This document shows positions 4,860 through 51,431 of a DNA stretch of 64,000 bases, in pieces. The stretch lies in contig CDRNST010000144.1 of assembly GCA_977016875.1 (NCBI GenBank), forward strand, positions 5,332,001-5,396,000, written 5' to 3'. The number at the start of each line of letters is the position of its first letter. Within the stretch, counting starts at the first letter, position 1. Origin of the DNA: Pavona decussata. Its lineage: Eukaryota. Below the pieces are notes generated by a model. The model did no database searches and was not told the DNA's origin. It saw nothing but the letters and a program-made list of their open reading frames with translations. Position numbers and translations under genes: made by a program.

Positions 4860-5587
4860 TTAAATTTGCGCTAGATCGGGGAGGGGGGGGGGGAATTCTG
4901 TCCACGGCAACTTTGAATCTGAATAACTTTGTTTTTAGTATTTGTGCAAATGCCATGAAACTTACTGACGTTTTCAGAAATTCATCTGGGAACAATTTGA
5001 TGTGGCTGGTTAGTGTTAATCAGTGACTTTGATGTTACCATAGCAACCAATTTTTGAACGACCGTTTTTCAGAAAATAGAAAATGTCATTTTTGAATAAG
5101 AAAAATTACTTTCTTACAGTAACTTTTATGTTTTTAGCTCATATTATTGATTACTTTTCGTTCAATTTTGGCGCTTCCTAAAAGTTTTGGGGAAATCAAG
5201 AAATCCGTAATGGTAGATCCAAGATGGCCGCCATTTGGTAACTATGACGTAATTACCACGTAATATGACGTCATACTTGTCGTTCCACTGTTTAGGATTT
5301 GGAGGGACAACATGTGGATTAAATTCCTCATCGGTGTGCGTTAAACCAGAATTCAAAAAAGACTGAATAACGTTACTGACAAGCTACTTTTGATCTTGAA
5401 GAAAGTAGCCTCCTGAAGAAATTTAGGTAAATCGTATGGATGTTATCAAACCTTATAGAATCCCCCAAGAAAGTGGAGCAAGCAATGAATCGTGACTATT
5501 TGTCAATACTTTCGTATTGACAAATATAATTTTAGAGCACTTTTGACCCGGCCTTACATAACGTTTGTTATGATATTTGCAGTAATA

Positions 5588-5950
5588 GACTTACACTCAG
5601 GTATGTGCATTTTCTCATCTCCAGACTGGGGTACCAACCTGCCCAGCATTGGACAGCCATTTCGTCCTAGTTGGGGGTCTCGGCAGGACAGCGTAAGGCA
5701 TGGTGGGTAATGGGAGAAAGATCCTATTTCTCCGGACGTCTACTGGTGCGTTGGTCTATAGAGATCCACCACGTGTACCGCATGTTTTGGATCACTGAGG
5801 TGGGAGAAGTAAGATCTTTCCCCCATTTCTATGCACCATGCCTTACGCAGTGCTGACAAGTTCCAAGTAGGAAGAAACAGCTGTCCACTGCAGGGCTGGT
5901 TGGTACCTCAGTCTGGAGATGTGCAAATGCACATACTTGACGGGTGAGTT
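5588..5950. mobile_element. MITE with about 75-bp imperfect TIRs
   Basis: ...GTATGTGCATTTTCTCATCTCCAGACTGGGGTACCAACC... is inverted against ...GGTTGGTACCTCAGTCTGGAGATGTGCAAATGCACATAC.... Confidence 0.7.
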
Positions 5951-8900
5951 CATGTCCATTCTTACAACGTATTACCTGTCATGGGAGGATATTGTTGAAC
6001 AAACTTACCTCATCATCAGCAATCCTCGTTCGTGTGTACATAGTAGCAATATGCCATCCCGCTTGGGATTTGTTGGGTAGCGTATCCATGATGCTCTTCA
6101 GGGTTGCCTCATTTTTCCTTGTGGGTGGAGGAAGGCGCATAACAGGTGGAACATTGGGAACGAAAGTTGTTATTTCCATCATAGGAAAATTCACGGCTGC
6201 GTGTTGACACGAGCACCCGAACACCACACAGGTCAGCACGTGAACAAGCTGATCACGTGTTTCAAGGCTCTTGGAAAACTCGTGATCGACATCTCCTTCT
6301 CTTACGGGAAAACCATTTTCGTGAATGTCCATCACCCATTACTGTAACTCGTGGTCTTTGGAAATTTCATCATCGGTTTGATAAAAAATGTTCACGAATT
6401 CCCCGATGAAATTAGAGATGGCATTCCACATACAAAGGCCGTCATCCCTGTTGAGAAAAGCAATTCAGATCAATGGGTGATTCCTAACGAGATTTGTTTC
6501 TGTTTATTTCCCATAAGGATTAATATTTGCTCCGGTGGGAACAGATGTTCCCAAAGTGACACTCACAGACATTTCTCACCTCCGCCCTCGCTCAACCTTT
6601 TTAGGCTGGTTGTATACGGGTATGCACATGTGGTCACCCTTTACCCATGAACAAGTCAAAACTGTAAAATAATAAAATTGCTCGTGTACAATTAGCCTCA
6701 CTTCACATCTCTTCCTTGTTCCTTGTATTTTTTTTGCACTTATCATTACAAACTGCCTAACAGAAAATAAACTTGATCACTCAGTTTACGTAAAAGTACC
6801 TGTAATAGTAGTTGGGTAATTTCTTGGTATTATCCACTCCTCTCTTCTTTAACATGTCAGGGAAAGAGAGCATCTCAAATTTGAACTTCTTGTACGTCTT
6901 TTCCAACAGCTGAATATGGCCTCCTCCTCCAATGCTAAGGGTCTTGTCAACAATACCTCCTTCTGCCGTGAGTTCGTTTCTGCCAATAGTGTTGATGGCA
7001 ATAACAGAACGAAGGTGAGGAAACAGAAGCTGGAAGATAGGATGGATGGACGGCAGCTGGCGCCATAAAGCAACAGCAAACGCTTCCATTAACAAATGGG
7101 TCTTCATCAGATGGGTTCCCATCTGTATGAAACAACAGGAAGTAAAAGTGTCTAGAGTTATTTACTAGTTGAATTGCTGTAACTACGTTTGTTTAGAAAG
7201 TAAACCACTCTGCTGGCTGGTTGATTGAGGGATGTTCGCTGATCGGAAACATCAAGGTTCGATGGCAAGTGTGAAACTTTAACCACAATTTTTCAACAAA
7301 GGACACTTCCTACTGACATACAAAGATAACTGTATGTCCGACGGTAATTTCAAAGATGTGGATGTAAGCCAAAAAGAAGTGTCGTTATTATAATACTACT
7401 TTATTTCTCAGAATATGCAGACTAAAGGCTCATATTTGATATGATTGGCTATTATTTTTATCAAAAATTTGATTGAATTACGAAATTAAATCGGAAGATG
7501 TAACTTTGTCTGTTCCTTTGTTTGCTTGTTTGCTTATTTGTGTTTGTCGATAAAATCGTGCGATCGAAATCAAATGTGAATACACCGAGATTAAATGTAT
7601 GGTACCCTTTATACGATTTAGTTACACTACACATGATAGGCTTTTGCTAGTGGAGGTACACCGAAACTGATCTTTGAGTCATCAAAGTACATAACCCTAG
7701 CCCTAAAAGCTCTTTTCATGGTAATACCACTAATGCCAAACTACTACTACCTGAAAGCAATGAGGCCCACGAGTCCCTTATACGGCTTCTAATAAACTAG
7801 TTTCTGTTGTATGAACGATACAGGTTGCTTTACTAAATAAAACGCTTTAAAACCTGATGAACTTGATGGTCGGCATTACGGAACCACATCTTTGCCAGCA
7901 GCCAATCATATTTAGAATCGTCAGGAGTCCATATTGGGTTGGTGTCGCTCGGTTGCTGGAACAGCTGGATGGCAATAGGCACCAGGTCTCCACAGCTCTT
8001 GACGTAAAATAGGCAAAGAGGCTCTGCTGTGTAAAATTTCAACTTTGAATTGCCGTCCTCTCCTCTGCGTCTGATGTCGACGAGTTCCTTGTAGTCAACA
8101 ATGTAAACGTGTCCAGCCTGATTGACAGAACGGTTACGTTAGTTATTTCGATATTTGGTTGTTGTGTCTATCGTGCAAGCCGCAAGTCAGCGGGCCAGTA
8201 TGAAGTGATGTTATCTATTATTGAGTTGCATTGGGATTTTCCACATTCGTACTGTATCCAGTTGGATGTAGCTTACAAAAATAAATATGGAAATCATCCG
8301 GCTAATAAGGACGTCAGTACAGTTGAGTACAACTTAATGTATGTAATCTCCCGCAGAATTGTTCTTTAAATCCAAGATCCTACGCAATAGTAGTAGACTA
8401 ATATTGCCACGGAAACAGTAAGGTTATTAATTAATGGTGAGAAATTCAAAAAACGTGTCAGTTTTGATGACAAATGGGATGCAATGTGGTCTGCCAAAAA
8501 AAAGAACATTTGTTCTTGCTTTTAGCATAAATTGAAAGAAGCTTCAAACTATATCAGGTGAGATTAATCATACCTTAATCTCTTCCATCAATGTCATCCC
8601 TCGATCGAGAACGTTTTTAACCAAGTCATTTGTAACAGAAAAGTTACTTGGCAACTCGGTGCACCTTTCAATGACGCATGGGTTGCAACCATTCAGGAAC
8701 TGGTAGCCAAATATTCGGTCTTCCATCCACAAATCATCCCGAGAAATTTTAGGTATGTCGCCTGTCCAACCAGTGAAGATCTTCTTAAAGCTGTCAAAAT
8801 TCTCCCAGCTGTCAAATAGAGTGCAGAGGTAAGACAGACCAAGGTTAATTTTTCCTTTAAGAGTACCTATGTGAAACGAGCGTGATGCCTCTTCTGAGAA

Positions 8901-11900
8901 TTGTGAATCTCGTGGAAGATCGTCATGTTTGGCGGCGTGAATAAAGCCCGGCAAATTGACTACTCCAGGAGGAAGTTGTCCCCAGCAGTATTTCTCTTTA
9001 CGTTCTTGAATCTCGAGAATTCGCTGAGCCCTGATGACTTCCGGTTGGTTATGGGAAGGGAGAAGAGCTACAAAATGAAATAATTAAAAGTATGGGGATT
9101 CAATGGGCCTCGGCAAATTTTAAAAAATAAAAATATAATGCGTATTAGCTTCTCCAGAAAGTGTGGTTCCAGCTACGTTAACTTCAGTTGCTGGAAACAA
9201 AGAAAATACGTGGTCTTGGTCACAAATGTGTTGACAAAAACCAAGGCCTCGAGAATCAACGGTATATTGAGAACAAAGAACTCCTAATTAAGCCTGCAAT
9301 AATGTAATGAAACAATTCTGTAAAGAAATTTTAATCTGTTGCAGAACAAGGGCCGCACCATATATTTAAATATCAGAAGTTTGTAAAGATGAATGTATAA
9401 GGCATAAACAATAGCACCCAATCACATCCTAGGAGGACTTGTGCGCCGGGATTTAGAGTAATATATTAAATAGTTATCAAGATATTTTTCTCTCCAGCAG
9501 GTCTTTCACTCTTCATAGAATACTCTCAGTTTGCTGCGTTTTTTTTGTAGTGAGTATGGTATCTCAGACAACAATGAGAAATTCCCAGTAGCCACAATGC
9601 CATTGGTCATATCGTTCGTGAACGTTATTTTCTCCTAAACCGCATAGTAGGCAGTTGTTTGGCACAGATAATAAGGGCAATTCTAATATGTTTGCTTAAA
9701 CTGGAGTTAACACCTCCCATATGTCGTAACCTTTACATTTATAGTTATTGAAATACCTTGTCCTTGAAAAACAACCACATCTGACACTACCCATCGATAG
9801 CAAGGGAACTGGAAGGCTCTCTCTTGTGTTGAGCTGGCCACGAAAATTTTGTTCACAAACCAATCAGGATTCTTCAACCAGCCACTGCTATTGTTGTGAA
9901 GCTGGATCATCAGCACTTCACCAACATCCATCGCCTGTATCATGTACTCATTCGTGTGTCCTGCTTCAAAATCATTGCGCCAGGAACCCAGACGAATCTT
10001 CTCCGTTTTACCTTTTGTTCCTGAAACGTGTTTCCAGATATGCAGTAATATAGGCAAAAATACGGAAATTACATATGTAAGTGGCAAAGCAAATAAAATA
10101 GCTGTGGTCGACAAAAGTTAGTACACTGTAAAAGGAAAGAAATAACAACATAGACTTGGAGCAAAATGAAAGACGTGTGACACATTCCATGAGTGATCAA
10201 AAAGGAGGATTTAAAACTATTTTCCATTTTTCTTTCTTTCTCTCTTTCTTTTTTTCTTTTCTCCAAACGGACACGGACCATTTTCGAAGTGATTATTTTT
10301 CAAGATTTTGCAGCACTAGCACTATGCCTACAAAATGAACCATTCGATTCTCAGTTTTACAGTTCTGACAAATGGTAAACGCCCTCAGTTTAACTAAGTT
10401 TCAGTGGGCATTGAGGACATTTTCTAGGAAAAGCGACTGCAAAACACCAGCTCACTACACTGTGTGTGTGTCTGGCTACACAGTCAGGTAAAGAAGCTAG
10501 ACTCTACTAGCACCATAAGTCATCATACAGTGGTAATAACGACACGGAAGTAGTCGATCGATGCAGCTGGATGTAAAGTGTAGAATAGCAATCTTAACAT
10601 GCCACGAAGCTATATTTGAATACATTAGCAAGGAGAGCTCTTGAAGTGTATCAGCTCTAAATACCTGTTAGCGACACGGAAATGTCTGCATTAGTTCCAG
10701 CTCTTGACTGGCTCCCAGTCTCCACACTGATGTTATAGGTGGCCACGTTATCTGGTGCTTGGCCTGACCTCCTGAGTGATCGAATTTTTTGCGTCCTTGG
10801 ATACAATTCCTTTCTTACATGAACTATACAGTTAGGGTGGTAGATAGAGCGCGCTGGTAGTAATTCAAGACAAGGTGATAGATTGCCAGGGTTAAAGCGT
10901 AGTTCCTCCGTAGCATCCGCGCTTAGGAGCACCATTAGTGTGACGTCAGCCACATCCAACCAGGGATGAGTGGCCTCGTCCCAGTATCTCACGACATTCA
11001 AAATGTCTGGTGGATCATCTGATTTGGGCTCATGTAGAGTCAACTGAAGTTTGTATTTCACTGGTCCGCGAGAAAGCCTCTCTTTGAACTCTTCCTTAAG
11101 ATAATCTTTGCTTCTAGTTTCTGATGGCAACCTCTTTTGATCCCTACAGTTAAGTAATACGATAAGCATATCCATTAACACTGAGAAAGGAATAATGGAT
11201 CCATACAGTGAGTAAGTGAGTGAGTATACAAGTTAAACGAATAGAAAAATATAACAAGCCCTTACCAAACATTCCTCTGATCTTCTTCTGATAGCAAACC
11301 TGTTTCCGGTGTCTCATCAGCTGGCATCAGTCGAAATCTGACGTAACGTTCAACTTCATCGAAGGCTTTAAAATCGTGGATAATCTCTGAGTAATACCGC
11401 TGGTCGTAAAACGATTCCGGTGCACGACGTATACCGTCAATGTTACTGGCAAGGCTGAAATTTGAAGTTAAAACATTCTAGCATTGTATAAGTAGTATAT
11501 CAAACAAGAGGAAGATTGTTTCATCCAATTTCCAAACAGCGAGAAGTGGGTTGATAAAACGAGGTGTACACATCAAAACAGCAATCATGATATAATTCCA
11601 TCAAAGTTTTTTTGTACAAATTTTCAGCGCAACCGACTTCAGAAATTCATCGATGTGAGTGAACACCTGTCTCAGAAATCTGGCTAATGTAGATATTCAT
11701 AGGCAGAGTCATGCGCGATCTTAACCCTCGCGGTGACTTTGAACCTGAATACTTTTAGTATTATTGACCGGCCTGAAACTTCAGCAATTTTCAGAAATTT
11801 ATCGCCGGTTACTGTTAATTGATTTTTGACAGGATTTTTTTTTCCAGAAAATAGAAAATCCCTTTTTAAAATGAAGAAAAATCACTTTGGGTAACTTTCA

Positions 11901-14900
11901 TGTTTCTAGCTCACATTAGTGTTCCTTTATTGGCTCTGATTACTTTTCGTTCAATTTCGGCGCTTTCCTGAAGTTTTTGGGAAGTCCAGAAATCCAAGAT
12001 GGCGGATCAAAGATGGCCGCCATTTGACAATTATGATGTCATTAGAACGTCATATGACGTCATCACTTCTCGTTGCAAGCCACAAAAGAAACGTCTTTTG
12101 ACGTACTATCTCTCTTCCAAGTCTCATTGTTATAGCTTTTATACTTGCGAACCCGGCCCCTGGGAAAAAAAAACAAAATGCCCGGTCTTGATAGGGTTTC
12201 AACGACAACGGCAACACCACAAAACTATAGGTCTATTCCAGTTTGATGTGTTCAATGATTTTGATGTTACAATTGCAACCAATGTTTGAAAAAGCCCTTT
12301 TTTAAAATGAAGAAAAATTACTTTTCCTACTCTGACTATGCTTTTAGTGTTCCTTTTTTGGTTTTGGTCAGTTTTCGTTTTTCCAGAGATCCAAGATTGC
12401 GGATCCAAGGTGGCCGCCATTTGGCAATCATGACGTAAATACATGTAATGTGACGTCATCATTTTCCATTGCGGTAATCGAACCGATGTCATTCCGCATA
12501 CTCCTCGGGGAAATGAGCTATCGGAAGACCCCCAGCGGGAGGGACTATGTAATAATTAGCAGGAGGGGGTTGGGTACTGACCAGCGGAAGCGGGGAGGGG
12601 ACAACGAGTTAATCTTTGTTTGTATTGTTATTTTGTCTGGAACTGTAACCTTTATGTATAAGAGATAGTTTACTTAGCATGGAAAGCGCACTGCAAAGGG
12701 CACTGCTAAGCGTCAGAAATCATGGGTTTGTTTCAAATTATCTGATCAAATTATGCTAGCAAATTTCTAATATTGTAATGTCCTGGTACTGTGTGGGGAT
12801 CAGAACAGATTCGTTTAGCCAAAGAATTTGCCATCTGCTTTTTGCGTACCAATCTCTCTGCCTAAGGGGATACGTACTTTTCTGTCGAGAGTGTAACACC
12901 ACTGAACTTTTTCCGTACAATTTCGGATGATGAAGACATTTAAAGTAACGAGTTTTGGTTTCAAATACAGGAAGGAAGAAAGAACAATCTGCACAATGGT
13001 CTACATTCTGCTGTTTCGTAGCCCAAAGAGTCTAGTCACAAAATTCCTTGTATTCTCTAAGCCGTGAGAAGATCTCTCAGAAAAGCTTTTAAGCTTAAAC
13101 CAAGCAACTTTCCAGAGAATATTGACGAGATGGGTAAACTGTTTAAAAATGTTTGATCGAGAGGTTTCACATGTAAATATCTTAAAATTCACAGATAAGG
13201 GTCAGAAACAGGGGTGTGCAATATTGAAGTGGCAGGACTGTTTGTGCCAGTATGTAAACTACTCGAGTCTCAAATGATGGAGTCTGCATTCGTAGGGCAT
13301 CCGATGACTGCACAGAACGTGGATGAACGAACGAACGCAGTAATCGGTGTAGCTCTAATGGAAGGAAGATCCATTGAGTTGATCCAGTTGACTGATTCAC
13401 TTTACGGCCAAGTACTATCAGGTAAAGAAATTATTTGTACTCAACCAGTAACAAAAATATGGAATGTACACTGTGAATGAAAGCACATGAAACATTTTTG
13501 TCCAACAGCTTGAGTGCCTTGAAACAAAGGCAGAGAAAAGGGCAGAACAATAAAAGCGCTACCAGAAATTTGCTGGACAGATGGAAAGGGAGGCAAGGCA
13601 TTGACGAGTAAGCAGCATACACTGTAGTGAAGCGACAGGGTTTGAGAATTAATGGAGGTAAGCGAGCAGTAACTGAAAGGGTTCTGGGCCGTACACACGA
13701 TGGGGGAAGTATGAGATGGATAATACTCTCAATGAGGATGTCAACATGGCTTCATCTTCAGACGCAAGTGGTTTGGAGCCACTGAAGTGAGTGATTCTGT
13801 GTCAACAGATTCTGAATCAGATTGTGGATATGTGGAGAACGGTTTTGACGTTTGTTCGTTCCCTAGTAAAATACCATGCAATTCAGCTAATGAAACGACA
13901 CGTGTTCTGTCAGAAGTCTTGATATTAGAGGAAACAGAATAGGAGAACTAAAGGATGGGGGAAGTGGATGAATGTTATTAATTATTTTTGGTACGAGGGG
14001 ATATTAGAGGGGTGAATACTTATATTTTTAATCATCTCTTTCCAGTTTCCCAATCTTCCCTTCCTGCTAATTATCGCCCTGTCTCCAATGCTGAAAGCCT
14101 CCTGTGTGTGTGTTCGAATATCCCTGAAGAAAAAACATACATTCTGTTGTAAATCCGCCTTAAACACAGTTCCAAATTTTAACTTTAAACATTCTTATGA
14201 AAATGAAGTGACAACTGTCCAACACGTGTCATCTAACTCAACTAAAATATGGCGGCCCCGCAAGTCCGTGAGGTCCCTAATCAGTAACATTAAAACACAT
14301 ACTTACTAATCAGGTCTCTTCAGATAATATCCTTTCAAGTCACCACTTCGAATAGCTTCTAGTGCATCATATATACCCTGTACATCCCAGAATATAGTGG
14401 ATCTTCCAGTTGACATAATAATGTCCAACGGACTCTCTGCATCGCTGTCAGCAAATCGTATTGAGGCGCTTAAGAAATTCAACCCCGCATCATCGATAGA
14501 CTTAAAAGTTGCATGACGAAGGCATACAGGAAAAGAACGGCCAGGAGTGAAGAACTCACAGTTAGGGAACTGAGGATCAGCTACGATTGTGGCAATGCCC
14601 TGGGCTCCTATTCCGACAGCATGAGTTGGGCGCTTACCCTTTGACCACGCAGCAGCGCCAAACATAAATTTGATTTTCTCCATCTCGATACGGAGCTTGA
14701 CATCATCAAAAATACTGCTTGGTAGAATCTGAAACTACAGAAATGATTTTGAATTAAACATGTTTGGCATACACACATCCTTTTTTTATTTATACATGTA
14801 TTGCAACACAGGAAAGACATCAGTAACGGAGAGATAAAAATGATAAAAATGATATGTTTGCCGTGCGGACGTGCAATTTATTTTCGTTGGCACTCAGAAT

Positions 14901-17900
14901 AAACATGACTTGGAATCGCAGTATGACATGAGATCATAATAATTTCACACATTTAAAGGGAACACGGGGTTTTTCAGTCTTACTACACTGATAATTGCCA
15001 TTGGGCCATCTACTGCGACCACGTACACTGATAAGGTAGTTGCCCTCTGAAACGGGAATAAAGCTGAGCAAAAGCACAGCACACGCGCCTTTCCACCTCA
15101 ATGGTGATTTTGTGTCCCTAAAATAGAATTAGAATGTCCACCCGCTGCAAAAACTTTATATACGGGCAACGCATAAGTTATACATATAATAATCAACCAA
15201 CAGAACCTTAAGCCCTTCGTCGGTCGGTGACATGCTGGAAACATAAAACCTCATGTTAACACACAGCCACTTTGCAAGAAACTCAATTTTGCTTTTAAAA
15301 TAAATAACGAATGAGGTTGGCACCCCAAATTATGTCCACCAGATCACATTTTGCACGTTTACATTTGCACAAACGGCACTAACCTTCGGGACTTTTTCAG
15401 AAATTATCCCGGAACAATTTGGAATGGTAGGTAAGAGTTCACTGAATGTAACCATGGCAACCAATTTTTGACAGGCAGTTTTTTAAATTTACAAAACAAC
15501 TTAACTTCCTTACAGTTAATCTCATGTTTTTTTTAATATCATTTTCGTGTTTTTAGATAGCTCATAGAAAACTGACGCTATCATGGAGCCAAGGTCGAAA
15601 AGAACTTCTAAGTATGTCTGTCACGAGAGCCTTTATAAAAAACACTTCATACTTTATCAGGGAGATGACATCACTGGAAAAACAGAAAAATAAATATCCT
15701 TAGAAACCAGCCGGACTTTGAACCAGCTTGAATCGCAAAACCAGCTAACACAACTGAAACTAAACAACACATAAATCACTAAATAAACAATATTTAACTT
15801 GATAACTGATGTAACATGACATCAATTGATTGATTGAGTTCTGAATGAAAACAATTACCTGATTACTTTTTCTTACCGTATTTACTTCCTTCATCTTCCT
15901 GTTAAATTCTTCTTCTCCTTTGATTTCTTTGTAAATTTCATAGCCAAAGTTCTTCCCTGTCATAGAGAGTCAGACATTTAAGGTCAGAATCTTGGAGCAA
16001 TTGAAAATTAAAACTTCATTGGGTCAAATTAATGAACCCGAAGGGATTTAACAAGAGTGGTTCTAATGCTAACATTACGAAACACAAGCCGATATGCAAC
16101 GTTAATAAGAAACTCTTAATCATACAAAAACTGTTTACACTACCCAGACGTCACTTAATCGTGCAATCCGTAAAGCAAAAAATGTACGTACATTCCATTT
16201 TGCCTCAGCGTTTTTCCCCTCACAATTATTCTGAGAAGAGTTTTCCATGTAAATGGTAAGCACCCCTGCTTTCAAGCACTTTATCCCAACACTGTGAACG
16301 ACTTTGGCGAGAATAGAAAACGTCCAATGTTCTTTGAAAATTTATCAAAGATTTTTAAAGGCGCCACCTCTAGCGCATGCGCAAATTAAGTCTTATTGCG
16401 AGACATCTACTGGTAAACGCACCCTGCTAAGGTTTCCTTACGTTATCTCTCGGTCCACCGGTTGTATCAAAAATATGTCAAAAGACCTCGAATGTTGGCC
16501 AGATAAGACGATAACGGAAACTTAGATATGGAAGTTCGAAGAAGTTAGCAATAATGTGATAATTTTATTTTAAATTAACGTCTTCCCTGACAAAATAATC
16601 TTTAAATTACTTACTACCAGTGATAAAGCCTAGAAAACATATTAAAGTTTCATTTCGCGACGGTCTTTACAATAATTCTAGTGAACCCCATGTGGCAATT
16701 ACACGTGCTTCATTTGAATCAAAACGATTGAATTTTGACAGCTGAAAGTACGTCATTACTGTGCCCCTTACAGGACGCCTACATGACAAAAAATTCTTAA
16801 AATGTAATCAAGGAGGAATGCCTGAAAATTTTGAGGAAATGGTAACCATGAAAGAAATTACTTTTCGCACATATTTATTGTATTTCGTGATGCAGTTTGT
16901 TTTTCAAAATACCTGTTTAATTTTGTTAAAGACAGAAAATACATTTCATCCTCGATGGCATCGAATAACCCAAATTGAAGGCCAAATTAGTAGCTACCAA
17001 AACATCTCTCGTCTGCAAACGGAAAGAGTGCTTAGATATTTTGGTTGTATTGTGTTGATTTGTGTAATGTTTAACACTTCATCTGAAATGACATTTTGCT
17101 GGCTATCGCGTAAAATGGAAGCAATCCCACGCATTCAAAACAAGCAGTTTTTTTAAACTGACGAAACATTTAATTTCACCACTACACTGCGATCAAATTA
17201 TATTCCATATGCCCAATGATGAATTACTCTAGCATTCAAGCTGTGAATTGTCTAAGAATAGTGCTGAGAAATATGTGAAAACAGGATGGATTTTGAGTTT
17301 TACTCAAATTTAATGACATTTTGATTGATTGTGAATATAGTTAACTGAGGGACTAGCTATGAAACTTGCCGTGACAACAATGATGGTACAATTTATGTTG
17401 AACGGGCCAAGACCGTGCACAATTCCTTGTTTTAACGTTCACAGTACAGGAACGTTTCTATTGGTCAGCTGCTCCAACACATTTTAAAATCTATTGTCGT
17501 CTGTGCACGGTCAAGGCCAAAACTTTTAACAAAAAACATATAACAAAGAATTTTGTCAGGCTTCGTAACCAATTCCATTTATTAGTATGGTTTGCAAATA
17601 ATCATATTGTTTTAAAATTACGGTTTATGGAGTTTTTAAGTCCCATCTGGTTCTATTTCTCTCCGGTGACAGCGTTTCTTGGCCGACATTTTCGGGTACA
17701 TGGAAGGATTAGGCTATAAAATAACTTACCTTTGATGACGACAGGTACCCCTAATTGACTTTGAGACGTGCTGATAAAATGATATGATCGTTTATTTTCC
17801 GAGGAGATCCAGAAAGTGACGCCGAAGTTGATCGGCAGGCCGAAAACTGTCGAGCAAGGTATATCACCACAAGTTCTGTTCCTTTGATTTAACCTACCTA

Positions 17901-40904: not shown

Positions 40905-43900
40905 CTAAATTGCGATGCTATTTGGTACTCTCTCCGGCAGCAAGTATTCATAAGGAAACTCCAAAGATGCATTACGCTGTTTGATGGCATTAGAGATCTT
41001 CTCGAGCGAGGACTGGAAACGAGAAATAGCACCTCCCACGGCTTCGCCAGTTAGTAAGCCCTGGGAATAGTCACCAATGAATCTCTGCGGGAAGAGATAC
41101 AGAAAGGGATTTATACATTATAAGCCAAAATGTTAAAGAAATGACAACAAAATGTTTTTATTTTACCTTTAGACAACAAAACCTTATCCAAAGAAGCCAT
41201 TGATGTCGCTTATTTATTTTTAACATCCAGAAAAAGACTAGACCAAGTGATACAGTGAAGAGACAACGTTGATTTATTTTCAAGCCAGAATTACTTTTCT
41301 TGTAAAAAAATCTCTTAAATAGCCAAAACGCCGAAGACTCAGTAACACAATATATAAGTAGAAACTTTTGGCACTAGGAAAAGGATTTTAAGAAAAAAAA
41401 TTGGAGGGATGTAGCTTTAACTTTCCATACATTTGTCTGTATAGCGAACCAGCCGTGAACTGTTACTAAAAATAGTTCGCGGGAAAAAATACAGGGAAAT
41501 GTATGGAAAGTTCAAAACACGACTGGTGCCAAAAGTTTCCAATTCATGAATTCTTCAGAAGCGATGTTTTATGAAAACTATTTGACATCGGATTTCCATA
41601 CAAACACTGTTATTTCACGCCTGTTTACCTACTCGTCAAAATGGCGTCGAAAACCGTGATGAGGCCTATTGCAAAATCAGCGCTAGTATTTTATACCGCT
41701 TGAGATAATCATACACCAAAGAATTTGCTGAAAAACCGCTTTTCACCTCAAACAACATAGCTGCCTGAGAAAATAAGGTAAATGCTATTAGATCTTATGG
41801 AAATCTCATGGAGATACCCGAGGAAGAGGATAAGCAGTGGTTGGTACTCTTTTTGTTTGTTACTAAAACTAGGTCAGTTAGGCCATTGCAAAGGAAACAT
41901 TTTATTGGTATGGCCTAAGATCGTGATGAAATAATATTCCTTACGAGTGAACCACCAGGGTTGGCTTTGTTTGCACAAATCTCACCTCATCATCAGCAAT
42001 CCTCGTCAGTGTGTACACAGTAGCAATATGCCATCCGGCTTGGGACTTGTTGGGCAGCGTATCCATGATCCTCTTTAGCGTTGAATCATTTTTCCTTGTG
42101 GGTGGAGGAAGGCGCATTACAGGGGGAATATTGGGAACGAAAGCTGTTATTTCCATCATAGGAAAGTTCACGGCTGCGTGTTGGCACGAGCACCCAAACA
42201 CCACACAGGTCAGCAAGTGAACAAGCTGTTCACTTGTTTCAAGGCTCTTGGGAAACTCGTGATCAACATCTCCTTCTCTTACGGGAAAACCATTGTCGTG
42301 AATGTCCATCACCCATGACTGCAACTCGTGATCGTTGGAAATTTGATCATCCGTCTGATAAAAAATGTTGGTGAATTCCCCGATGAAATGAGAGATGGCG
42401 TTCCACATACGAAGGCCGTCATCCCTGTTAAGTAAAGAATTTCATATGAAAGAATGATCTTTAAGAGATTTCCCTATAAGGATGCTTCACAAGGCACGCT
42501 GGTTGTACGCGGGCACCTTTTTTTTATGCGTCGGCATTTGAAAAAATGTTTTCTAGTGTGTACCAAAAAAATTTGTCAAGTTTCTCCTTGACAAGTTCCC
42601 ACGAAAAACGCGGTCACATTTTTTGCATGAACATGTCAACATTATAACGAAAAGGTATCAACAAAAACCAGCCTTATCCAGACGTCTCCTTGTATTGATA
42701 TGTACGAGTTCTCTTACTCCAAGAGATTACACTACTAATAACAAATTTGATTACCCAATTTACTTTAAAGTACCTGTAATAGTAGTTAGGCAATTTCTTG
42801 GTATCATCCACTCCTCTCTTCTTTAACATGTCAGGGAAAGAGAGCATCTCAAATTTGAAATTCTTGTACGTCTTTTCCAACAGCTGAATATGGCCTCCTC
42901 CTCCAACACTAAGAGTCTTATCAACAATTCCTCCTTCTGCTATGAGCTCGTTCCTTCCAATAGTGTTGATGGCCATAACAGAACGAAGCTGAGGGAACAG
43001 GAGCTGAAAGACAGGATGGATGGACGGCAGTTGACGCCATGACGCAACAGCAAATGCTTCCATTACCAAATGGGTCTTCATCAAGTGGGTTCCCATCTGT
43101 ATAGAATAAAAGGAAGTAGATTTTCCAAGCATCATTTACTGTGTTTTGAATTTCTGCTACGTTTGTCCAGTAAATATACCCGTTTGCCCTTTAGTGACTG
43201 GTTTACCTGGAGATAATGGCGCCTGACAAGAAGAGAAAAGATACGATGGCAAAGAGCCAACGACTCTAAGATCTTCCGATCGTCCGATCAAAAATCCGAC
43301 GCGCTAACCACTACACCACCGGGCCTCCACTAAGGACGATTAATTAAAAGCAAGCTATGATTTTCGGAGTAATTTCTTATTCAGCTTCTAATTAAATTAC
43401 AAATGTATGAACGTTCGCATTGCCTAAATAAAACGCTTAAAACCTGATGAATTTGATGATCGGCATTACGGAACCACATCTTTGCCAGCAGCCAGTCATA
43501 TTGTGAATCGTCAGGAGTCCATATTGGGTTGGTGTCATTCGGTTGCTGGAACAGCTGAATGGCAATAGGCACCAGGTCTCCGCAGCTCTTGACGTAAAAT
43601 AGGCAAAGAGGCTCTGTTGCGTAAGATTTAGACTTTGAATTGCCATCCTCTCCTCCGCGTTTGATGCCGGAGAGTTCCTTGTAATCAACAATGTAAACGT
43701 GTCCCGCCTGGTTGAAGTAAAGCTTACATTAGCTATTTCCATATTTTGGTTTGGTAGCCGGACCAGTATGGACTTTTTTCATCTACGTTTGTAAGTTGGG
43801 TTTATTAGGGATATAGCTACATTCTAAGAAATGCAAGAAATCACCCGGCTTGTAATTAAGGACGTGAGCACAGCTGGAAAAAGTTGAGGTAGTGCATGTA

Positions 43901-45858
43901 CCACAGACCTGTTCCTAATTTATTGGAGGAGTTCCAAATTCCCTGAGATCCGGCCATCCCTAATTTCTCAGTCTCTTGATGATTAAGGCCCTTTCTTCGA
44001 CACTCAATTTGCAGAACTCGTTTCATAAATTTATTCCGCCTCAAAAATGAAGATACCTTGAGTTTTAAACAAGAGTTTAACCAGGCTTTATTGTATGGCC
44101 GCCTCCGAGGGAGTAATATGAACCTCATCGAATATAACATCGCTGTGTTATATTGACAGGCTACCCGAGCGAGGAAGAAATTGGAGCAATCTTGCCTGCT
44201 CTGGATTTCCTCGTTGTACCATGGACAATGCAAACCTTTCTTGTTATTTTCAGTAGAAAGGCATACAAAATTGTTCGGAAAACCCTCTATATTTTCTTTA
44301 GAAAGGAAGGGAGCATTTGATATTGGTTCTAGGTATTTTTTTGGTGTTTGCTTCATTTGCATGTTTCGTTGAATCAGCGAGTTGGTCGGTGAGTTGTTGT
44401 TTCCTGATTTTCATCATTCAGACTACAATGCATGAGAACTTAAACTTATTTTTTCTGAGCTTTTAAGTTATGTAGAGTTATGAACTTATTCGCATTCCTG
44501 CATTACTGTTTTCTTAAACACACAGCGTTGTGATCAAAACGGTGAAGTTCAAAAACCATTTTTAACCAACACCGCCTAGGAAGAACCTCGTGATCTGCTA
44601 AAAATGGCGACCAGAGTTGCTGGCTTTCGATTCTTTCGGTATTTGAGAAAAGCTAGACTTTGCTTATCCGAAAATTATTTACTTCCTTTAAGCATTTTTA
44701 AAGTTATTACCCCTTAAAGTTATTTTTTGCATTATTTCATGCTTAAGCCAGTTTCACAATTATTAACTCCTTAAAGTATTTTTTTTGCTTTATTACATGC
44801 ATGCTTTGCTGATGCTCCTGTAAATCCACTAAGAATGAAAATTCAGCATGAGGACGTTCTGTCCAAACACAGCAGTTTTATGTCTCTTATATATTGTAGT
44901 TTGATTAGACAGTAATGACCTCTTACTAAGTAAGCTCGAGGGTCGTACTGGGAAATACTGACGTAAGGTCATTGCAGTTCGGACCGAGTGGCATCTTTAG
45001 CTTCCTTATGAGTTACTTCATGCTCAAGACACGAGGTCTATAAATTCTAAACTATTATCGATACCATCACAGTGTAGCAGCAAGTAAATTTTCCCATCGT
45101 CACAACAATGTAATAAATTGTCCAGATTTTTGTTTCAAATACAAGAAAGCGATTAAATACTGTTTATTCGCAATAGTGCCATGCTATTGCGGCCTTACCG
45201 AAAGATACCAGTTTAAGTGATAATGCAGATGAAACGCAATGTATGTAAAATACCTTTACACTTCCTTTTAATACTAATTGGACCCATCTTAAGAATAATT
45301 TGATGTAAGCTTACTTATACCTTAATCTCTTCCGTCAATGTCATCCCTCGATCGAGAACGTTCTTAACCATGTCATTTGTAACAGGAAAGTTGCTCGGCA
45401 ATTGGCGGCATTTTTCGATCACACTTGGATTGCAACCATTCAGGAACTGGTAGCCAAATATTCGGTCTTCCATCCACAGTTCATCCCGAGAAAGTTTAGG
45501 CACGTCGCCTGTCCAACCAGTGAAGATCTTCTTAAAGCTGTCAAAATTCTCCCAGCTGTCAAATAGAGTGCAGAGGTAGGACAGACCAAGGTTAACTTTT
45601 CCTTTCAGAGCACCTAAATGAAAAGAGCGTGATGCCTCATCAGAGAATTGTGAATCTCGTGGGAGATCGTCGTGTTTGGCGGCGTGAATAAAACCCGGCA
45701 AATCGACTACACCAGGAGGAAGTTGTCCCCAGCGGTACTTCTCTTTACGTTCTTGAATCTCGAGAACTCGCTGAGCACTGATGACTTCCGGTTGATCTTG
45801 AAACGGAAGGAGAGCTATAAATGAAATTAAACAAACAGAATGGAATTCAGCATAACCT

Positions 45859-45897
<39 letters not shown>

Positions 45898-48800
45898 AAA
45901 TGAAATGCGTATTAGCCCCTTCTGAAGGTTTAGTTCCCATGTTGAATTAAATTGCTTGAAAACGAACAAAATATGTCACAGTAAAGAAGTCTTCGTGACA
46001 AATATCTTGATAATATGCCATCCCTCAATATGCAAAGGCAATGATTGAGACCAAAGAGCTCCTAATTTAAACTTTCACTGACGTTTGTCATGGCATGTTA
46101 GAATACCTTTTCCTTGAAAAATAACCATATCGGATACTACCCAGCGATAGCAAGGAAACTGGAAGGCTTTCTCTTGTGTTGAACTTGCCACAATGATATT
46201 GTTCACAAACCAATCAGAATTCCTCAACCAGCCACTTCTATTGTTGTGAAGCTGGACCATCAGCACTTCACCGACATCCATGGCCTGCACCGTGTACTCA
46301 TCCGTGTGCCCTGCTTCGAAATCATTGCGCCAGGAATCCAGAGGAATCTTCTCCGTTTTACCTTTTGTTCCTGAAACGTGTTTCCAAATATGCAGTAGCA
46401 TAGGGAAAAATACGAAAATGACATATGTAAGTGGCAATGTAAACAAAATAGCTGTGACGAAAGCTAGCGTTAGTTGAGGGAAAATGTAAAAGGAAGGATA
46501 TAACAACGTAGACATCGAAGATTAAACACCTTATGGGGCCGGTCTAACCAGTGGTCGAAGAAGGACTTACAAACTCGATTACGGGTTCAGCATCATGACT
46601 AAGTGCTACGTAGAGTACGAAGGCTAGAGGAATTAATTATTAATGGTTCAGTATCACGCCTTACCATTTCGTGGAAAAAAGTATCTTTTCTTGGAACATC
46701 AATCTAGTTACTTAACGTTTGTTTGTTTGTTTGCTTGTTTTTTTTATAAAGTGGTTTCTGTCAGTGTACATAGCAGATCATGTAAGAAGTGAGGAATCAG
46801 AAAAAAAAAAAAACTCTCCAGTGTAAATTTAAGTGCTGAAAAGAAGGTAATTAATTTCCCAGCGATATTAAAAAAAAATAAAAAATAAAATGTAGGATTC
46901 GAACTCACGAGGCGCCACATTTAATTTCAGGTAATATAAATATCATATCTAACTCGCAATCAAAGAAGATACTTTAGCTTAGTTCATTTTGGTTTCCTTG
47001 CGCATTAAGGATGTTGCCTAGAGAAGCGCCCCCAAAACACCAGTTTACTATAGCTGCACCGCGGTTCTGGCGATACAGACAGGTAAAGAAACTGGAAACT
47101 AATGATATTACAATCCACCTGCCACACAGTGCAAATAACGATATGGAAGTAGTCGATTGATTTAGGTGGATATGTAGTACAGATAACAATTGTCGAAGCT
47201 GCATTCGAATACGTACACCTTAAAAAATCATCAATTTATCAATTTCAGCAAGGAGAGCTCTAAATTCATGAAATTACACGACAGATTTACCTGTCAGTGA
47301 CACAGAAATGTCCGCATTAGTTCCAGCTCTCGACTGGCTCCCAGTCTCCACGCTGATGTCATACGTGGCCACGTTATCTGGTACTTGGCTTGATCTCTTG
47401 ATCGATCGAACTTTTTGCGTCCTTGGATACACTTCCTTTCTTATATGAACTATACAGTTAGGGTGGTAGATAGAGCGCGCTGGTAGTAATTCAAGGCAAG
47501 GTGATAGATTGCCAGGGTTAAAATGTAGTTGCTCTGTAACATCCGGGCTTAGGAGTACCATTAGTGTGACGTCAGCCACATCCAACCAGTGATGAGTGGC
47601 CTCGTCCCAGTATCTCGCGATGTTCAAAATGTCGGGTGGATCATCTGATTTGGGCTCATGTAGAGTCAACTGAAGTTTGAATTTCACTGGTCCACCAGAA
47701 AGCCTCTCTTTGAACTCTGGCTTCAGATAATCTTTGCTTCTAGTTTCTGGTGGCAACCTCTTTTGATCCCTACAGCAAAGTTATTTGGTAAACATATCTA
47801 TTTAAAATGAATAATAGATCGGTCAAGTCGATAAGTGAGTGAGAATATACAAGTAAAAAAAATTTACAAGTTCAACAAGTTTGTGGATTGATAGAGCGGT
47901 TTTCAATCGAGTTTCTTAAAAAAGGCGCTCTGTTATTGATAAGCAGAATTAACCAAAAAGGAACAAAACCAGTCGTGATTGGTCGCACGCTTTTCCCCAT
48001 GCTTTAAGCCGCTTTAGTCATTGTATTGCTTACGTCTGTTGTGATTGGCCAGAGTAGCTTTACTTTTATTTTTAGTTTTATGACAGTTTATAAAAAATCG
48101 ATCCAAACAAACAAACAAACAAACAAACAAACAAACAAACAAACAGACAAACAAACAAACAAACAAACAAACAAACAAACTGAAATTTGCGTTTTCGTTC
48201 TGTTTGCAAACATTAGCAACAACAACGATAGTTTTCGATTGTCGGTTTTTTTCCGGTAACAGACTTGGACAAATATTCTCTTCCTTTCCGCCCCACAATA
48301 AAATTCTAGCCAAGTTTTTCAGTCAATTTTTTTTTGTCCAGGACTAAACCAACTTGGAAAACTAGTACTCTTTACTAAATCCGTTTACACTCGAATTTTT
48401 ATTATTAGTTTTTTTTATTGTGTAATTTTGTCCTTTGATAGCTATAGGTAATCGGCAAAGGTCAATCATCCCCGTGGAAGTATACGCCAAAACACCACAA
48501 GGTGATACGGGTAATTTATAAATTTAATAAATCAAAACGTTTTCAAACTCCTAACGTAGCCTTGCGTACATTATGAACATTATAGTCCAAGCACGAACGT
48601 GGTGTATGGTAATGCAGTGGTCTCTTTTTGACCAATTATAGGGCTCGAATGCCTTTTGTGTTTTGATAAATACCTTAGACTGCCATTACAAGCCCTTACC
48701 AAACATTCCTCTGATCTTCTTCTGACAGTAAACCTGTTTCCGGTGTCTCATTAGCTGGCATTAGTCGGAATCTGACGTAACGTTTGACGCCATCAAACGC

Positions 48801-51273
48801 TTTAAAATCGTAGATAATCTCTGAGTAATACCGCTGGTCGCAAAACGATTCCGGTGCACGACGTAGACCTTCGATGTTACCGGCAAGGCTGAAATTTTAA
48901 GATAATCGGATACATTAACTTAGTAACCCTGTTTGTAGAGTAAAAGCAAAACATTTATTTCACAGCAGCTATAAGCAATGATAAAACTATCCACTATATT
49001 TGTTGCAGGTAATATTACGCCATAAACTGGGCATCTCGAATGCAACGGCTTGTCTTGATCACATCATTCAGAATTTTGCTTGAAAACGACTGCTTTCGTA
49101 CGGTATAAGTTGTATACCACATACAGCTCCAACTTACTGCTAGTGAAGGACATTGAACTGCCTCCACACCGCCTCCTTGAAAAGCTGTACGACGCCTCCA
49201 GAAAGTTTCAAGTAATTCGGAAGTTAAGAGAGACATAATATCCCGCATGTAACAATCATGGGGTAAAGAAAAAAAGCCTGATTCTCCAATAGGAATTGAC
49301 CCCATAAAATTCCGTACATCACTCTGATGGTTTAATAACTGTCAGTTAATGAGGGAATATTTTTTCACAAATACATTTTTAAGGTTGGGATTCTCTATCG
49401 AATAGTGAACAACGAAGACAATAGAAAAATTACGGCCTTTAAGCTTCAAGGGGAAAAAACACAAAGTCCGAGTGGCTGCTAGGACAATTAATGTCGAAAG
49501 GAGAAAGAACGCTGGCAGATTTTAATAGATCACTGATGTATTAAAAGTTTAGTTTTAACTTTAATAGATCACTTACCTAATAAAATTTGATGAGACAAAC
49601 ATAAAAGAAGGGATATCTATTGCGTATATCTAATCAATAACCAATAAATTTCGGGAAAAACGTTCGGGAATGCCCCTGCAGAAAACATATATACTCACTA
49701 ATCAGGTCTTTTCAGGTAATAGCCCTTCAAGTCACCACTTCGGGTAGCTTCTAGTGCATCATATATACCCTGCACATCCCAGAAAATAGCGGATCTTCCA
49801 GTTGACATAAGAATGTCTAACGAACTTTCTTCATCGCTGTCAGCAAATCGTATTGAGGCACTTAAGAAGTTCAACCCCGCATCATCGATGGACTTTAAAG
49901 TTGAATGGCGAAGGCACACAGGATAACAACGGCCAGGAGTGAAAAACTCGCAATTAGGGAACTGGGGATCAGCTACGATTGTCGCGATGCCCTGGGCTCC
50001 AATGCCGTCTGGATGAGTTGGCCGCTTACCCGTTAACCATGCAGCAGTGCACATAATAAATTTAAGTTTCTTCTTTTCGATGTAGAGATTGACCTTATCG
50101 AAAATACTGCTTGGTGGATTCTGAAACCACAGAAATGGTTTGAAGTAGACATACTTTCTTTTTGAAACGATAAAGAGATTAGTTACAACGGGATTAAAAA
50201 AAATCATGTCTGCCGTGTACATGTGGGAGTAGAATAGAATTAAATCCCAGTGTCATTAAGAATAAGTACGAACAAATATTAGAATTAATATCAAATGAGG
50301 TAGTGATAATTTTTTCATTTCAAGTTTAACTAACATCCTTATTTCTTCTTTACTTGCTCTGATCTACTCCCAGTGACAACTCCTTTTCCCTATCTGAGTT
50401 CCAATTAACAACCTGCTCAAATGTTCGCAGCTAAATATCTAATTTTTAAACATGTTTGAGTTTTACACATCGTGAAAACTTAAGGTTCCAGAGGTTACTC
50501 CCGGACGTTACTTAACCAAGAAAACCTAATCGAGACTACTTAAGCAAATAGCAAACTTCCGAAGGAAAATTCAGAAAGAACTGCAGTATAAAGAGGGCAA
50601 CCTCGAACTGACGTCACAGCAAAATACGTACGAGTGCAAACCGGGACCTTGAGCTCAGTGCCTTGAATGACAAGACCAGCATGACAGTCACAAGCTACCG
50701 AGTAGTGTAAATAAAATTACTCAATACTTAAATTTTCTTTTGTTATTTATTATTATCTATTGTTATAACGACAATAGTCGATTGTTAAGAAACAATACTT
50801 ATCTTACTAGGTTAATGTGACAAACATCCTAGGATTTGAATGTCGATGCGTGGTATATGTGGAAGAAAGACCCCAGTTGGGAGAACTCGGGTTTTCTTTT
50901 CCCTAATAATATTGCCTGTGTGACTAGCTGAAAAAAATAGATCTATTGTAAATTGATTTGATCGTTTTGTGAGAAAGGTTCTCATATATATTATTCCCTG
51001 ATCTTCTGAGTCAAATCTCATGTTAGCTGATAACTTTGTGTTTTACCGTTATTGCTTCCTTCATCTTCCTGTTGAATTCCTCTTCTCCCTTGATTTCTTT
51101 GTAAATGTCATAGCCAAAGTTTTTCCCTAAAAGAATTGAAAGATAAAACTTCAGTAGGTCAAATTTAAGAACCCCCAAAATATAACAAGTTTAAATCTGC
51201 TTACAGTTCAGGAAACACAAGCTCTTCAGTATGCAACTTGAAAAGGTTTCCACTGAAAGGGTTATTATTATTA

Positions 51274-51349
<76 letters not shown>

Positions 51350-51431
51350 AGGCAATTCACACTATCAGAGAGTCCAAGAAGTCGTGAAATTCGTAAAAGG
51401 CGTAAAAGGGAACATGGCACATACATTCCAT
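40905..51431 (-). CDS. AOS-LOX: Allene oxide synthase-lipoxygenase fusion (catalase-related haem domain + PLAT + R-type LOX), copy B, intact, about 1046 aa
   Basis: Eleven GT-AG coding exons: 51425-51431, 51047-51126, 49699-50120, 48700-48888, 47291-47769, 46107-46370, 45321-45814, 43444-43707, 42774-43096, 41986-42424, 40905-41084. Each has the same length as its copy A counterpart and no stops were seen. Motifs: KRPTH, RKEVY, THLMKTHL, INTIGR, QHAAVNF, C-terminal Ile. Confidence 0.95.
48104..48180. repeat. (AAAC)n microsatellite
   Basis: Tandem CAAA units. Confidence 0.95.
51262..51348. repeat. (TTA)n microsatellite in intron 1 of AOS-LOX B
   Basis: Tandem TTA units. Confidence 0.95.

What the first reader, a model, noticed from the sequence alone, without database searches (positions are those of the whole stretch)
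49699..50120. Catalase-related haem domain with a rebuilt distal pocket: Asn replaced by Ser in both paralogues
Seen: both copies keep the distal Thr-His (KRPTH) and the proximal R-x3-Y (RKEVY/RKELY). They read DILMSTG (B) and DIIMSTG (A, 14307-14728). P. homomalla cAOS, recalled from memory, has DIVMNTG, where Asn137 is the distal Asn conserved across catalases. The catalase channel motif D-x-R (cAOS DAR) is NFL here, position 150 is Ile, and copy B has RHS (catalase-like Ser) and an unusual HPD after the distal His. Established: small pocket changes switch coral catalase-related enzymes between AOS and hydroperoxide lyase (Capnella cAOS/cHPL). Inference: a change shared by both diverged paralogues is not decay, so this lineage may run a different hydroperoxide reaction (lyase, epoxyalcohol or other).
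Basis: partly seen in the sequence, partly recalled or inferred. Interest (0 to 1): 0.8.

Follow-up and report, generated by a model that had tools for sequence, protein, structure and literature searches.

The report
Coral AOS-LOX haem domain lacking distal Asn
This is one exon of an expressed coral allene-oxide-synthase/lipoxygenase fusion gene in which a normally conserved haem-pocket asparagine is serine; the change is real and fixed across a whole coral gene subfamily, but published mutagenesis suggests it alters speed, not chemistry.

Summary
Window 49699-50120 (-) is exactly exon 2 of an intact, spliced, transcribed AOS-LOX fusion gene (gene B). Gene A (exon 2 at 14307-14728) is a paralogue, and a third copy lies just outside the window. 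Aligned to Plexaura homomalla cAOS (PDB 1u5u), both copies keep R64, T66-H67, R102, R349, Y353 and R360. N137 is Ser, D115-A-R117 is N-F-L, and L150 is Ile.

The Ser is not private to these two copies. It is invariant in all 33 database sequences of a well-supported "Ser-type" clade (Acropora, Montipora, Pocillopora, Oculina and others). Q274T and S344C are fixed with it. dN/dS between A and B is 0.27.

None of the eight paralogues in this genome has Asn: three have Ser, three Gly, one His and one Gln.

The functional reading is only partly supported. Asn137 mutagenesis of cAOS (Gao et al. 2008, as cited in PMC5617202) changed rate, not chemistry, and stony corals contain allene-oxide-derived products. 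The known AOS/lyase determinant positions (150, 176-177) match neither enzyme here, so the product cannot be predicted. No stony-coral AOS-LOX has been expressed.

Verdict: a new variant of a known kind, of moderate interest. The scan's notes hold no earlier record of this on other DNA.

The parts
49699..50120 (-). Gene B exon 2: distal-haem half of the catalase-related domain (cAOS residues about 31-169). It carries R64, P65, T66-H67, R102, K107, N-F-L at the 115-117 column, Ser at the 137 column and Ile at 150.
   Evidence: PDB alignment. RNA splice joints 50120|51047 and 48888|49699. AG/GT sites.
49803..49805 (-). Gene B Ser codon (TCA) at the cAOS Asn137 column
50013..50018 (-). Gene B distal Thr-His codons (cAOS T66-H67)
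51047..51126 (-). Gene B N-terminal coding exon (KNFGYDIYKEIKGEEEFNRKMKEAIT), preceded by an AG acceptor at 51127-51128
   Evidence: RNA joint 50120|51047 with 80 matching bases. Sequence. tblastn with P0175.
51425..51431 (-). Inferred start of gene B: ATGGAAT followed by a GT donor. It would give M-E-W(T|GG) when spliced to 51126.
   Evidence: Pattern found. It matches the MEWKN start of P0175. Not confirmed by reads, so this is inference.
48699..48888 (-). Gene B exon 3 (cAOS about 170-235). It holds the G-N pair at the column of the cAOS N-L / cHPL Y-S specificity pair.
   Evidence: RNA joints. Translation. tblastn. Alignment of P0175 to 3dy5.
47290..47768 (-). Gene B exon 4: proximal haem half (T at the Q274 column 47664-47666, C at the S344 column 47454-47456, R349-K-E-V-Y353 at 47427-47441, R360) and the start of the PLAT domain
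40908..46369 (-). Gene B PLAT and lipoxygenase exons (46107-46369, about 45318-45814, 43441-43710, 42773-43099, about 41974-42408, 40908-41087), with WLLAK, HAAVN and a C-terminal SIAI-stop
   Evidence: tblastn with P0175 covers residues 1-1047. Landmarks. RNA joints.
14307..14728 (-). Gene A exon 2, paralogue of the finding (83% aa identity). Ser codon at 14411-14413, Thr-His at 14621-14626, K at the K60 column, RHA.
3304..15963 (-). Gene A, a full-length AOS-LOX fusion (exon 1 at 15874-15963 with ATG, RKELY at 10801-10815, WLLAK, HAAVN, SIAI-stop at about 3304). Boundaries of exons 3 onward are approximate.

Best explanation
The stretch is exon 2 of one of three closely related copies of an anthozoan AOS-LOX fusion gene. 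These copies belong to an old, conserved 'Ser-type' subfamily of the catalase-related haem domain.

Shown: the haem-binding and O-O-cleaving residues are intact. These are the Tyr353 ligand with Arg349, the propionate arginines R64, R102 and R360, and the distal Thr66-His67 pair. The gene is fused to a complete PLAT-lipoxygenase and is transcribed. The distal Asn137 is replaced by Ser throughout the subfamily, together with Q274T and S344C. In most members, including this window, R117 is also Leu.

Inferred: the domain is an active haem enzyme. It takes the fatty-acid hydroperoxide made by its own lipoxygenase domain and cleaves the O-O bond homolytically on the Tyr-ligated haem, as cAOS does. 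It most likely still gives an allene oxide. On this reading Ser tunes rate or substrate fit and does not switch the chemistry.
For: Alignment to 1u5u and 3dy5 keeps all haem ligand and distal Thr-His residues. Full-length coverage of a 1047-aa Ser-type homologue by both genes, with no stops and the LOX landmarks kept. Spliced RNA contigs at the exact exon borders. dN/dS 0.27 between A and B. Ser is invariant in 33 database sequences plus the 3 copies here. The Ser clade has 100/99 support and is sister to a Gly-type clade. PMC5617202 reports that N137 is not important in catalysis per se, citing Gao et al. [quoted passage not shown] Stony corals contain alpha-ketol and cyclopentenone, the breakdown products of allene oxide (PMC5793058). 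This coral genome has no Asn-type paralogue at all, so some non-Asn form probably does AOS chemistry. cAOS turns over at about 1400 per second (PMC5617202 Table 1), so even a large rate loss could be tolerated in a fusion enzyme; this last point is inference.
Against: No stony-coral AOS-LOX has been expressed (PMC5793058; no later report found). Coral homogenates given arachidonate made only 8-HETE, not AOS products. The two positions shown to switch lyase to AOS (150, 176-177) are Ile and Gly-Asn here, which matches neither cAOS (Leu, Asn-Leu) nor cHPL (Phe, Tyr-Ser). Position 65 is Pro, as in cHPL. The near-invariant R117 is also lost. The lipoxygenase domain lacks the 8R-LOX carboxylate-anchor Arg, so the substrate may not be 8R-HpETE. 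Which paralogue (Ser, Gly or His type) makes the coral's allene oxide products is unknown.
Confidence: 0.5

Rival explanations
1. One reading: the Ser-type pocket (S137 with L117, I150, P65, G-N at 176-177, T274, C344) is rebuilt for a different hydroperoxide transformation (lyase, epoxyalcohol synthase or other), or for a different hydroperoxide isomer.
For: Several family-invariant positions change together and stay fixed for a very long time. This is the pattern expected of a functional shift after duplication. Small pocket changes do switch cHPL to cAOS (PMC5617202). The specificity positions here match neither enzyme, and P65 is cHPL-like. The LOX domain lacks the Arg anchor. Trace aldehydes were seen in Acropora extracts.
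Against: Mutating N137 alone did not change cAOS chemistry (as cited). P65A in cHPL did not change the product. Allene-oxide products exist in stony corals, and this genome offers only non-Asn paralogues to make them. There is no biochemical data for any member.
Confidence: 0.3
2. Tolerated loss: Asn137 is dispensable in animal AOS-LOX-like proteins, and Ser is a frozen accident with no adaptive meaning.
For: In the animal part of the tree the column is highly variable: Ser, Gly, His, Ala, Asp, Val, Met, Gln, Tyr and Phe, with only 9 Asn among 63 rows. Amphioxus paralogues alone show Ala, Asn, Asp, Val and His. The mutagenesis shows the residue is non-essential.
Against: Within each subfamily the residue does not drift. 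Ser is invariant in about 35 sequences and Gly in all Gly-type sequences across deep coral divergences. Neutrality would not give this.
Confidence: 0.15
3. The haem domain is catalytically dead or only regulatory, and the gene works as a plain lipoxygenase.
For: Coral homogenates given arachidonate produced only 8-HETE. One paralogue of this genome (C237:429391-429714) has lost the distal Thr-His.
Against: In genes A and B every haem-binding and distal catalytic residue except Asn is kept, and the domain is under purifying selection.
Confidence: 0.05

Closest known systems
Plexaura homomalla catalase-related allene oxide synthase domain of the AOS-LOX fusion protein (PDB 1u5u, 3dy5)
   Same: Same N-terminal haem domain + PLAT + lipoxygenase architecture. 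A Ser-type homologue (P0175) aligns over residues 1-385 at E 1e-86. R64, T66-H67, R102, K107, R349, Y353 and R360 are kept.
   Different: N137 is Ser, R117 is Leu, D115 is Asn, A65 is Pro, E140 is Arg, L150 is Ile, the N-L specificity pair is G-N, Q274 is Thr and S344 is Cys. K60 is Thr in gene B (Lys in A). Activity is unknown.
Capnella imbricata catalase-related hydroperoxide lyase (cHPL-LOX; PMC5617202)
   Same: Fusion architecture, conserved Thr-His and Tyr, and Pro at position 65.
   Different: cHPL keeps N137. Its product-determining F150 and Y176-S177 are Ile and Gly-Asn here.
Predicted stony-coral AOS-LOX genes (Acropora, Orbicella; Lohelaid and Samel 2018, PMC5793058) and RefSeq 'allene oxide synthase-lipoxygenase protein-like' entries
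   Same: These are the same gene family, and some are in the same Ser-type clade: Acropora palmata, Montipora foliosa, Pocillopora damicornis and Oculina patagonica are 66-76% identical to genes A and B.
   Different: That paper lists T66, H67, R349 and Y353 as conserved and does not mention residue 137. None of these genes has been expressed.
True haem catalases
   Same: Tyr-ligated haem with a distal His. 'RHS' in gene B recalls the catalase R-F-S motif.
   Different: The Pfam Catalase model does not match these exons or P0175 at all. There is Thr instead of Val before the distal His, and the distal Asn and the channel D-x-R are absent.

Membership tests
Coral cAOS-type haem domain of AOS-LOX fusion proteins | N-terminal haem domain fused to PLAT + lipoxygenase in one gene | tested here: met
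   tblastn with P0175 covers residues 1-1047 for both genes. Pfam finds PLAT and Lipoxygenase in P0175. WLLAK, HAAVN and SIAI-stop are present.
Coral cAOS-type haem domain of AOS-LOX fusion proteins | Proximal Tyr353 ligand with Arg349, and propionate arginines R64, R102 and R360 | tested here: met
   Alignments to 1u5u and 3dy5
Coral cAOS-type haem domain of AOS-LOX fusion proteins | [quoted passage not shown] | tested here: met
   KRPTH in both copies. Invariant in the Ser clade.
Coral cAOS-type haem domain of AOS-LOX fusion proteins | Distal Asn137 | tested here: not met
   Ser in A, B and the third copy. No Asn in any of the 8 paralogues of the genome.
Coral cAOS-type haem domain of AOS-LOX fusion proteins | Converts 8R-HpETE to an allene oxide | not testable with these tools
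   Needs recombinant enzyme. No stony-coral member has been assayed.
Coral catalase-related hydroperoxide lyase (cHPL) | F150 and Y176-S177, which direct the lyase reaction | tested here: not met
   Ile at 150 and Gly-Asn at the 176-177 column of gene B
True catalases (Pfam PF00199) | Match to the Catalase profile; Val-His, distal Asn and channel Asp | tested here: not met
   No Catalase hit at E up to 1. Thr-His, Ser and N-F-L are present instead.

The most novel reading that the evidence does not exclude
The Ser-type AOS-LOX genes of corals (signature S137/T274/C344, mostly with L117) are a functionally distinct paralogue class. On this reading they turn a lipoxygenase hydroperoxide, possibly not 8R-HpETE because the LOX domain lacks the Arg anchor, into something other than an allene oxide. 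The Gly- and His-type paralogues in the same genome would be further specialised enzymes, giving corals a family of catalase-derived oxylipin synthases comparable to plant CYP74.
Probability: 0.3. Interest if true: 0.65.

Novelty: new variant of a known kind. Interest (0 to 1): 0.4.

Why it matters
AOS-LOX transcripts are widely used as wound, disease and stress markers in reef corals (for example PMC12019164). Yet what the stony-coral enzymes make is explicitly unknown (PMC5793058). This work shows that the coral genes fall into sharply defined subfamilies, each with its own fixed residue (Ser, Gly or His) in place of the textbook distal Asn. It also shows that one coral genome has no Asn form at all. 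That gives a concrete, cheap set of constructs to express. It also provides a natural test of the conclusion from mutagenesis that the distal Asn tunes rate but does not determine chemistry.

Tried and rejected
1. Gao et al. 2008 (PMC2598388, PMID 18652800), Mashhadi et al. 2016 (PMC5267355), Gao et al. 2009 (PMC2755933), Oldham et al. 2005 (PMC544295) and Teder et al. 2015 (PMC4528142) are not held. The N137 mutagenesis is therefore cited through PMC5617202. The list of mutants, including N137S, and the size of the rate loss come from my memory.

2. The P. homomalla sequence could not be placed in my trees.

3. No annotated octocoral canonical AOS-LOX came back from either protein search. P0036, which I suspected might be one, is no closer to 1u5u than the Ser-type protein is.

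4. The joined spliced protein of genes A and B was not built or searched. All searches were exon by exon, and a natural full-length homologue (P0175) served as the whole-protein reference.

5. Structure prediction was not run. The tool returns no coordinates, so distances of residues 117, 137, 274 and 344 from the haem could not be measured.

6. The Pfam scan of the exons gave nothing useful for the haem domain.

7. The scan's earlier notes hold nothing on this family apart from one note on the LOX exon.

8. The Dendronephthya gigantea RefSeq protein falls inside the Ser clade next to robust stony corals. I do not use it as proof that octocorals have a Ser type.

Full report
**What is at the coordinates**

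Window 49699-50120 on the minus strand translates without stops to 140 residues. In the whole PDB these match only the Plexaura homomalla allene oxide synthase domain (1u5u, 3dy5; E 2.6e-28). The paralogous stretch 14307-14728 (-) matches the same entries at E 4.7e-33.

Both stretches are exact exons:
- Each is flanked by AG and GT.
- For gene B, spliced contigs from RNA runs of the same organism and from a coral metatranscriptome join 51047|50120, 49699|48888, 48699|47768, 47290|46369 and 46107|45814. All of these introns are GT..AG on the minus strand.

A 1047-aa natural homologue (P0175) aligns by tblastn over its full length to two gene loci, with no internal stops. Gene B spans about 51126 to 40908 and gene A about 15963 to 3304. 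Both keep the lipoxygenase landmarks WLLAK, HAAVN and a C-terminal SIAI. A third copy lies about 17 kb beyond the window end (G000:C144:5413246-5413662).

In the HMMER alignments to 1u5u:

| cAOS residue(s) | Gene B | Gene A |
|---|---|---|
| R64-A65-T66-H67 | R-P-T-H | R-P-T-H |
| R102-H-A | RHS | RHA |
| K107 | kept | kept |
| D115-A-R117 | N-F-L | N-F-L |
| V135-M-N137-T-G | L-M-S-T-G | I-M-S-T-G |
| L150 | Ile | Ile |

The only caveat is that the proximal motif lies in another exon.

**How unusual is Ser**

A full HMMER scan of 1.84 billion cluster representatives gave 218 relatives, and I examined the best 150 of them. For the exon tree I pooled those with the word-search fragments, P0175 and this genome's eight exons, and kept the 150 rows that covered the exon well. 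In those rows the column is Asn in 95, Ser in 30, His in 10 and Gly in 5, with a scatter of Ala, Gln, Tyr, Met, Asp, Phe and Val. The tree has few columns and is weakly resolved. It separates a cluster of 87 rows with 86 Asn from a cluster of 63 rows with only 9 Asn. The second cluster holds the named animal sequences I identified: amphioxus (Ala, Asn, Asp, Val and His among its paralogues), Lingula (Ser) and a nemertean (Asn). So Asn is the family rule, but it is not conserved in animal AOS-LOX-like proteins.

**The Ser clade**

The word search with the exon returned 22 ORF fragments at 64-98% identity. M-S-T-G-R is invariant in all of them. A second word search with P0175 returned named full-length proteins:
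- Ser-type: Pocillopora damicornis, Oculina patagonica, Acropora palmata, Montipora foliosa (two) and a Dendronephthya gigantea RefSeq entry.
- Gly-type: Porites harrisoni and several transcript assemblies.

On about 1060 aligned columns the Ser clade has 100/99 support and the Gly clade 100/100, and the two are sisters at 100/100. The Ser clade contains both complex (Acropora, Montipora) and robust (Pocillopora, Oculina) scleractinians. From established coral phylogeny it is therefore at least as old as crown Scleractinia. The Dendronephthya protein nests beside the robust corals on a poorly supported fork, so I leave its meaning open.

Genes A and B are 66-76% identical to all named Ser-type proteins. 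The source species is therefore not close to any of them.

**More than one residue changed**

I compared 89 Asn-type domains with the coral Ser-type proteins, column by column.
- N137S: Asn is 100% in the background.
- Q274T: Gln is 94% in the background.
- S344C: Ser is 89% in the background.

All three are fixed in every coral Ser-type protein and in gene B; genes A and B both carry T274 and C344. R117 (97% in the background) is Leu in all Ser-type proteins except the Pocillopora ones, and Cys in the Gly clade. I could not locate 274 and 344 in three dimensions with these tools.

**Selection and expression**

Between A and B, summing counts over exons 2-4 (362 codons), dS is 0.26, dN is 0.07 and dN/dS is 0.27. 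Together with the spliced RNA, this rules out decay.

**The rest of the genome**

Searching the 602-Mb assembly found the same eight exon-2 homologues with each of two queries: exon B and, independently, an Asn-type domain.
- Three Ser: the A, B and C cluster.
- Three Gly: C144, 5.02-5.09 Mb.
- One His: C237:496189. This is the paralogue most like P. homomalla cAOS per residue (108 bits over 110 residues).
- One Gln: C237:429391. This copy has also lost the Thr-His pair.

Two further exon-4 relics carry stop codons. No paralogue has Asn.

**What the literature says**

PMC5617202 names H67, T66 and N137 as the distal residues shared by cAOS and catalase. [quoted passage not shown] I could not open that paper. 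My recollection is that N137S was among the mutants and still gave allene oxide at a few per cent of the wild-type rate; that is memory, not a tool result.

The same PLoS One paper shows that only F150L and YS176-177NL move cHPL towards AOS chemistry, while P65A and I357V do not. Gene B has Ile at 150, Gly-Asn at the 176-177 column and Pro at 65. On the known determinants it is neither AOS-like nor lyase-like.

PMC5793058 analysed predicted stony-coral AOS-LOX genes. It lists T66, H67, R349 and Y353 as conserved, says nothing about residue 137, and states that their activity is unknown. It also found endogenous alpha-ketol and cyclopentenone in Acropora and Galaxea, but only 8-HETE from added arachidonate. 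I found no later report of an expressed stony-coral enzyme.

**Most likely mechanism**

Shown: an intact Tyr-ligated haem site with the Thr-His pair, fused to a complete lipoxygenase, conserved and expressed.

Inferred: the LOX domain makes a hydroperoxide. The haem domain cleaves its O-O bond homolytically, as in cAOS. The product is most likely still an allene oxide, for three reasons. Removing Asn alone does not change cAOS chemistry. Allene-oxide breakdown products exist in stony corals. This genome offers only non-Asn paralogues to make them.

On this reading Ser, with T274, C344 and L117, tunes rate or fit. I put this at 0.5. A different product or substrate gets 0.3, a frozen neutral replacement 0.15, and a dead domain 0.05. 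Within-clade invariance argues against neutrality. The mutagenesis argues against Ser being the switch.

**Membership**

The stretch meets every defining feature of the cAOS domain that I could test, except the distal Asn. It does not match Pfam's Catalase model. It lacks the cHPL determinants. I therefore file it as a variant subfamily of the cAOS-type domain, not as a confirmed allene oxide synthase.

**Limits**
- The joined spliced protein was not built or searched; work was exon by exon, with P0175 as the whole-protein proxy.
- P. homomalla could not be put in the trees.
- No structure modelling with coordinates was possible.
- The 5' micro-exon of gene B (51425-51431) is inferred only.

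Noticed in passing
window 45318-45812 (-), gene B LOX exon: Aligned to the 8R-LOX structures (3fg1/4qwt), the column I take to be the carboxylate-anchoring Arg182 (chain index 185, in E-S-R-K-A-A) is Ala in gene B, with a Lys two residues later. The numbering offset is my inference.
   Followed up: partly
window 51127-51431 (-): Gene B seems to start on a 7-base coding micro-exon (ATGGAAT then GT). A 298-base intron follows, holding a long (ATT)n-type microsatellite at about 51240-51330. Gene A has a contiguous ATG (MTGKNFGY) at 15963.
   Followed up: partly
G000:C237:429391-429714 (L008): This paralogue has Ala-Asp in place of the distal Thr-His and Gln at the 137 column. It resembles the degenerate clade (T66 and R349 altered) that Lohelaid and Samel described in Acropora.
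   Followed up: partly
G000:C144:5063461-5063871 and G000:C233:6950736-6951089: Exon-4-like fragments of the haem domain with in-frame stops (2 TAA; 1 TGA). These are probably pseudogene relics of further AOS-LOX copies.
   Followed up: no
G000:C144:5018488-5085414 (L004-L006): A second tandem cluster of three AOS-LOX genes lies 0.3 Mb from the window. All three have Gly at the 137 column and Cys at the R117 column. This Gly-type is also found in Porites harrisoni.
   Followed up: partly
window 47861-48057 and 50816-51012: Intronic stretches with very high summed contig depth in the RNA runs (up to about 4000 in the metatranscriptome) and many loose ends. These are probably expressed repeats or transposable-element pieces inside gene B introns.
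   Followed up: no
P0230 (RefSeq, Dendronephthya gigantea): A protein labelled as from an octocoral falls inside the Ser-type clade next to robust stony corals (71% identical to Oculina). It is either an ancient shared paralogue or a problem of assembly or labelling.
   Followed up: no
window 48090-48200: A (CAAA/GTTT)-type tetranucleotide repeat in intron 3 of gene B produces spurious LFVC-repeat ORFs.
   Followed up: no
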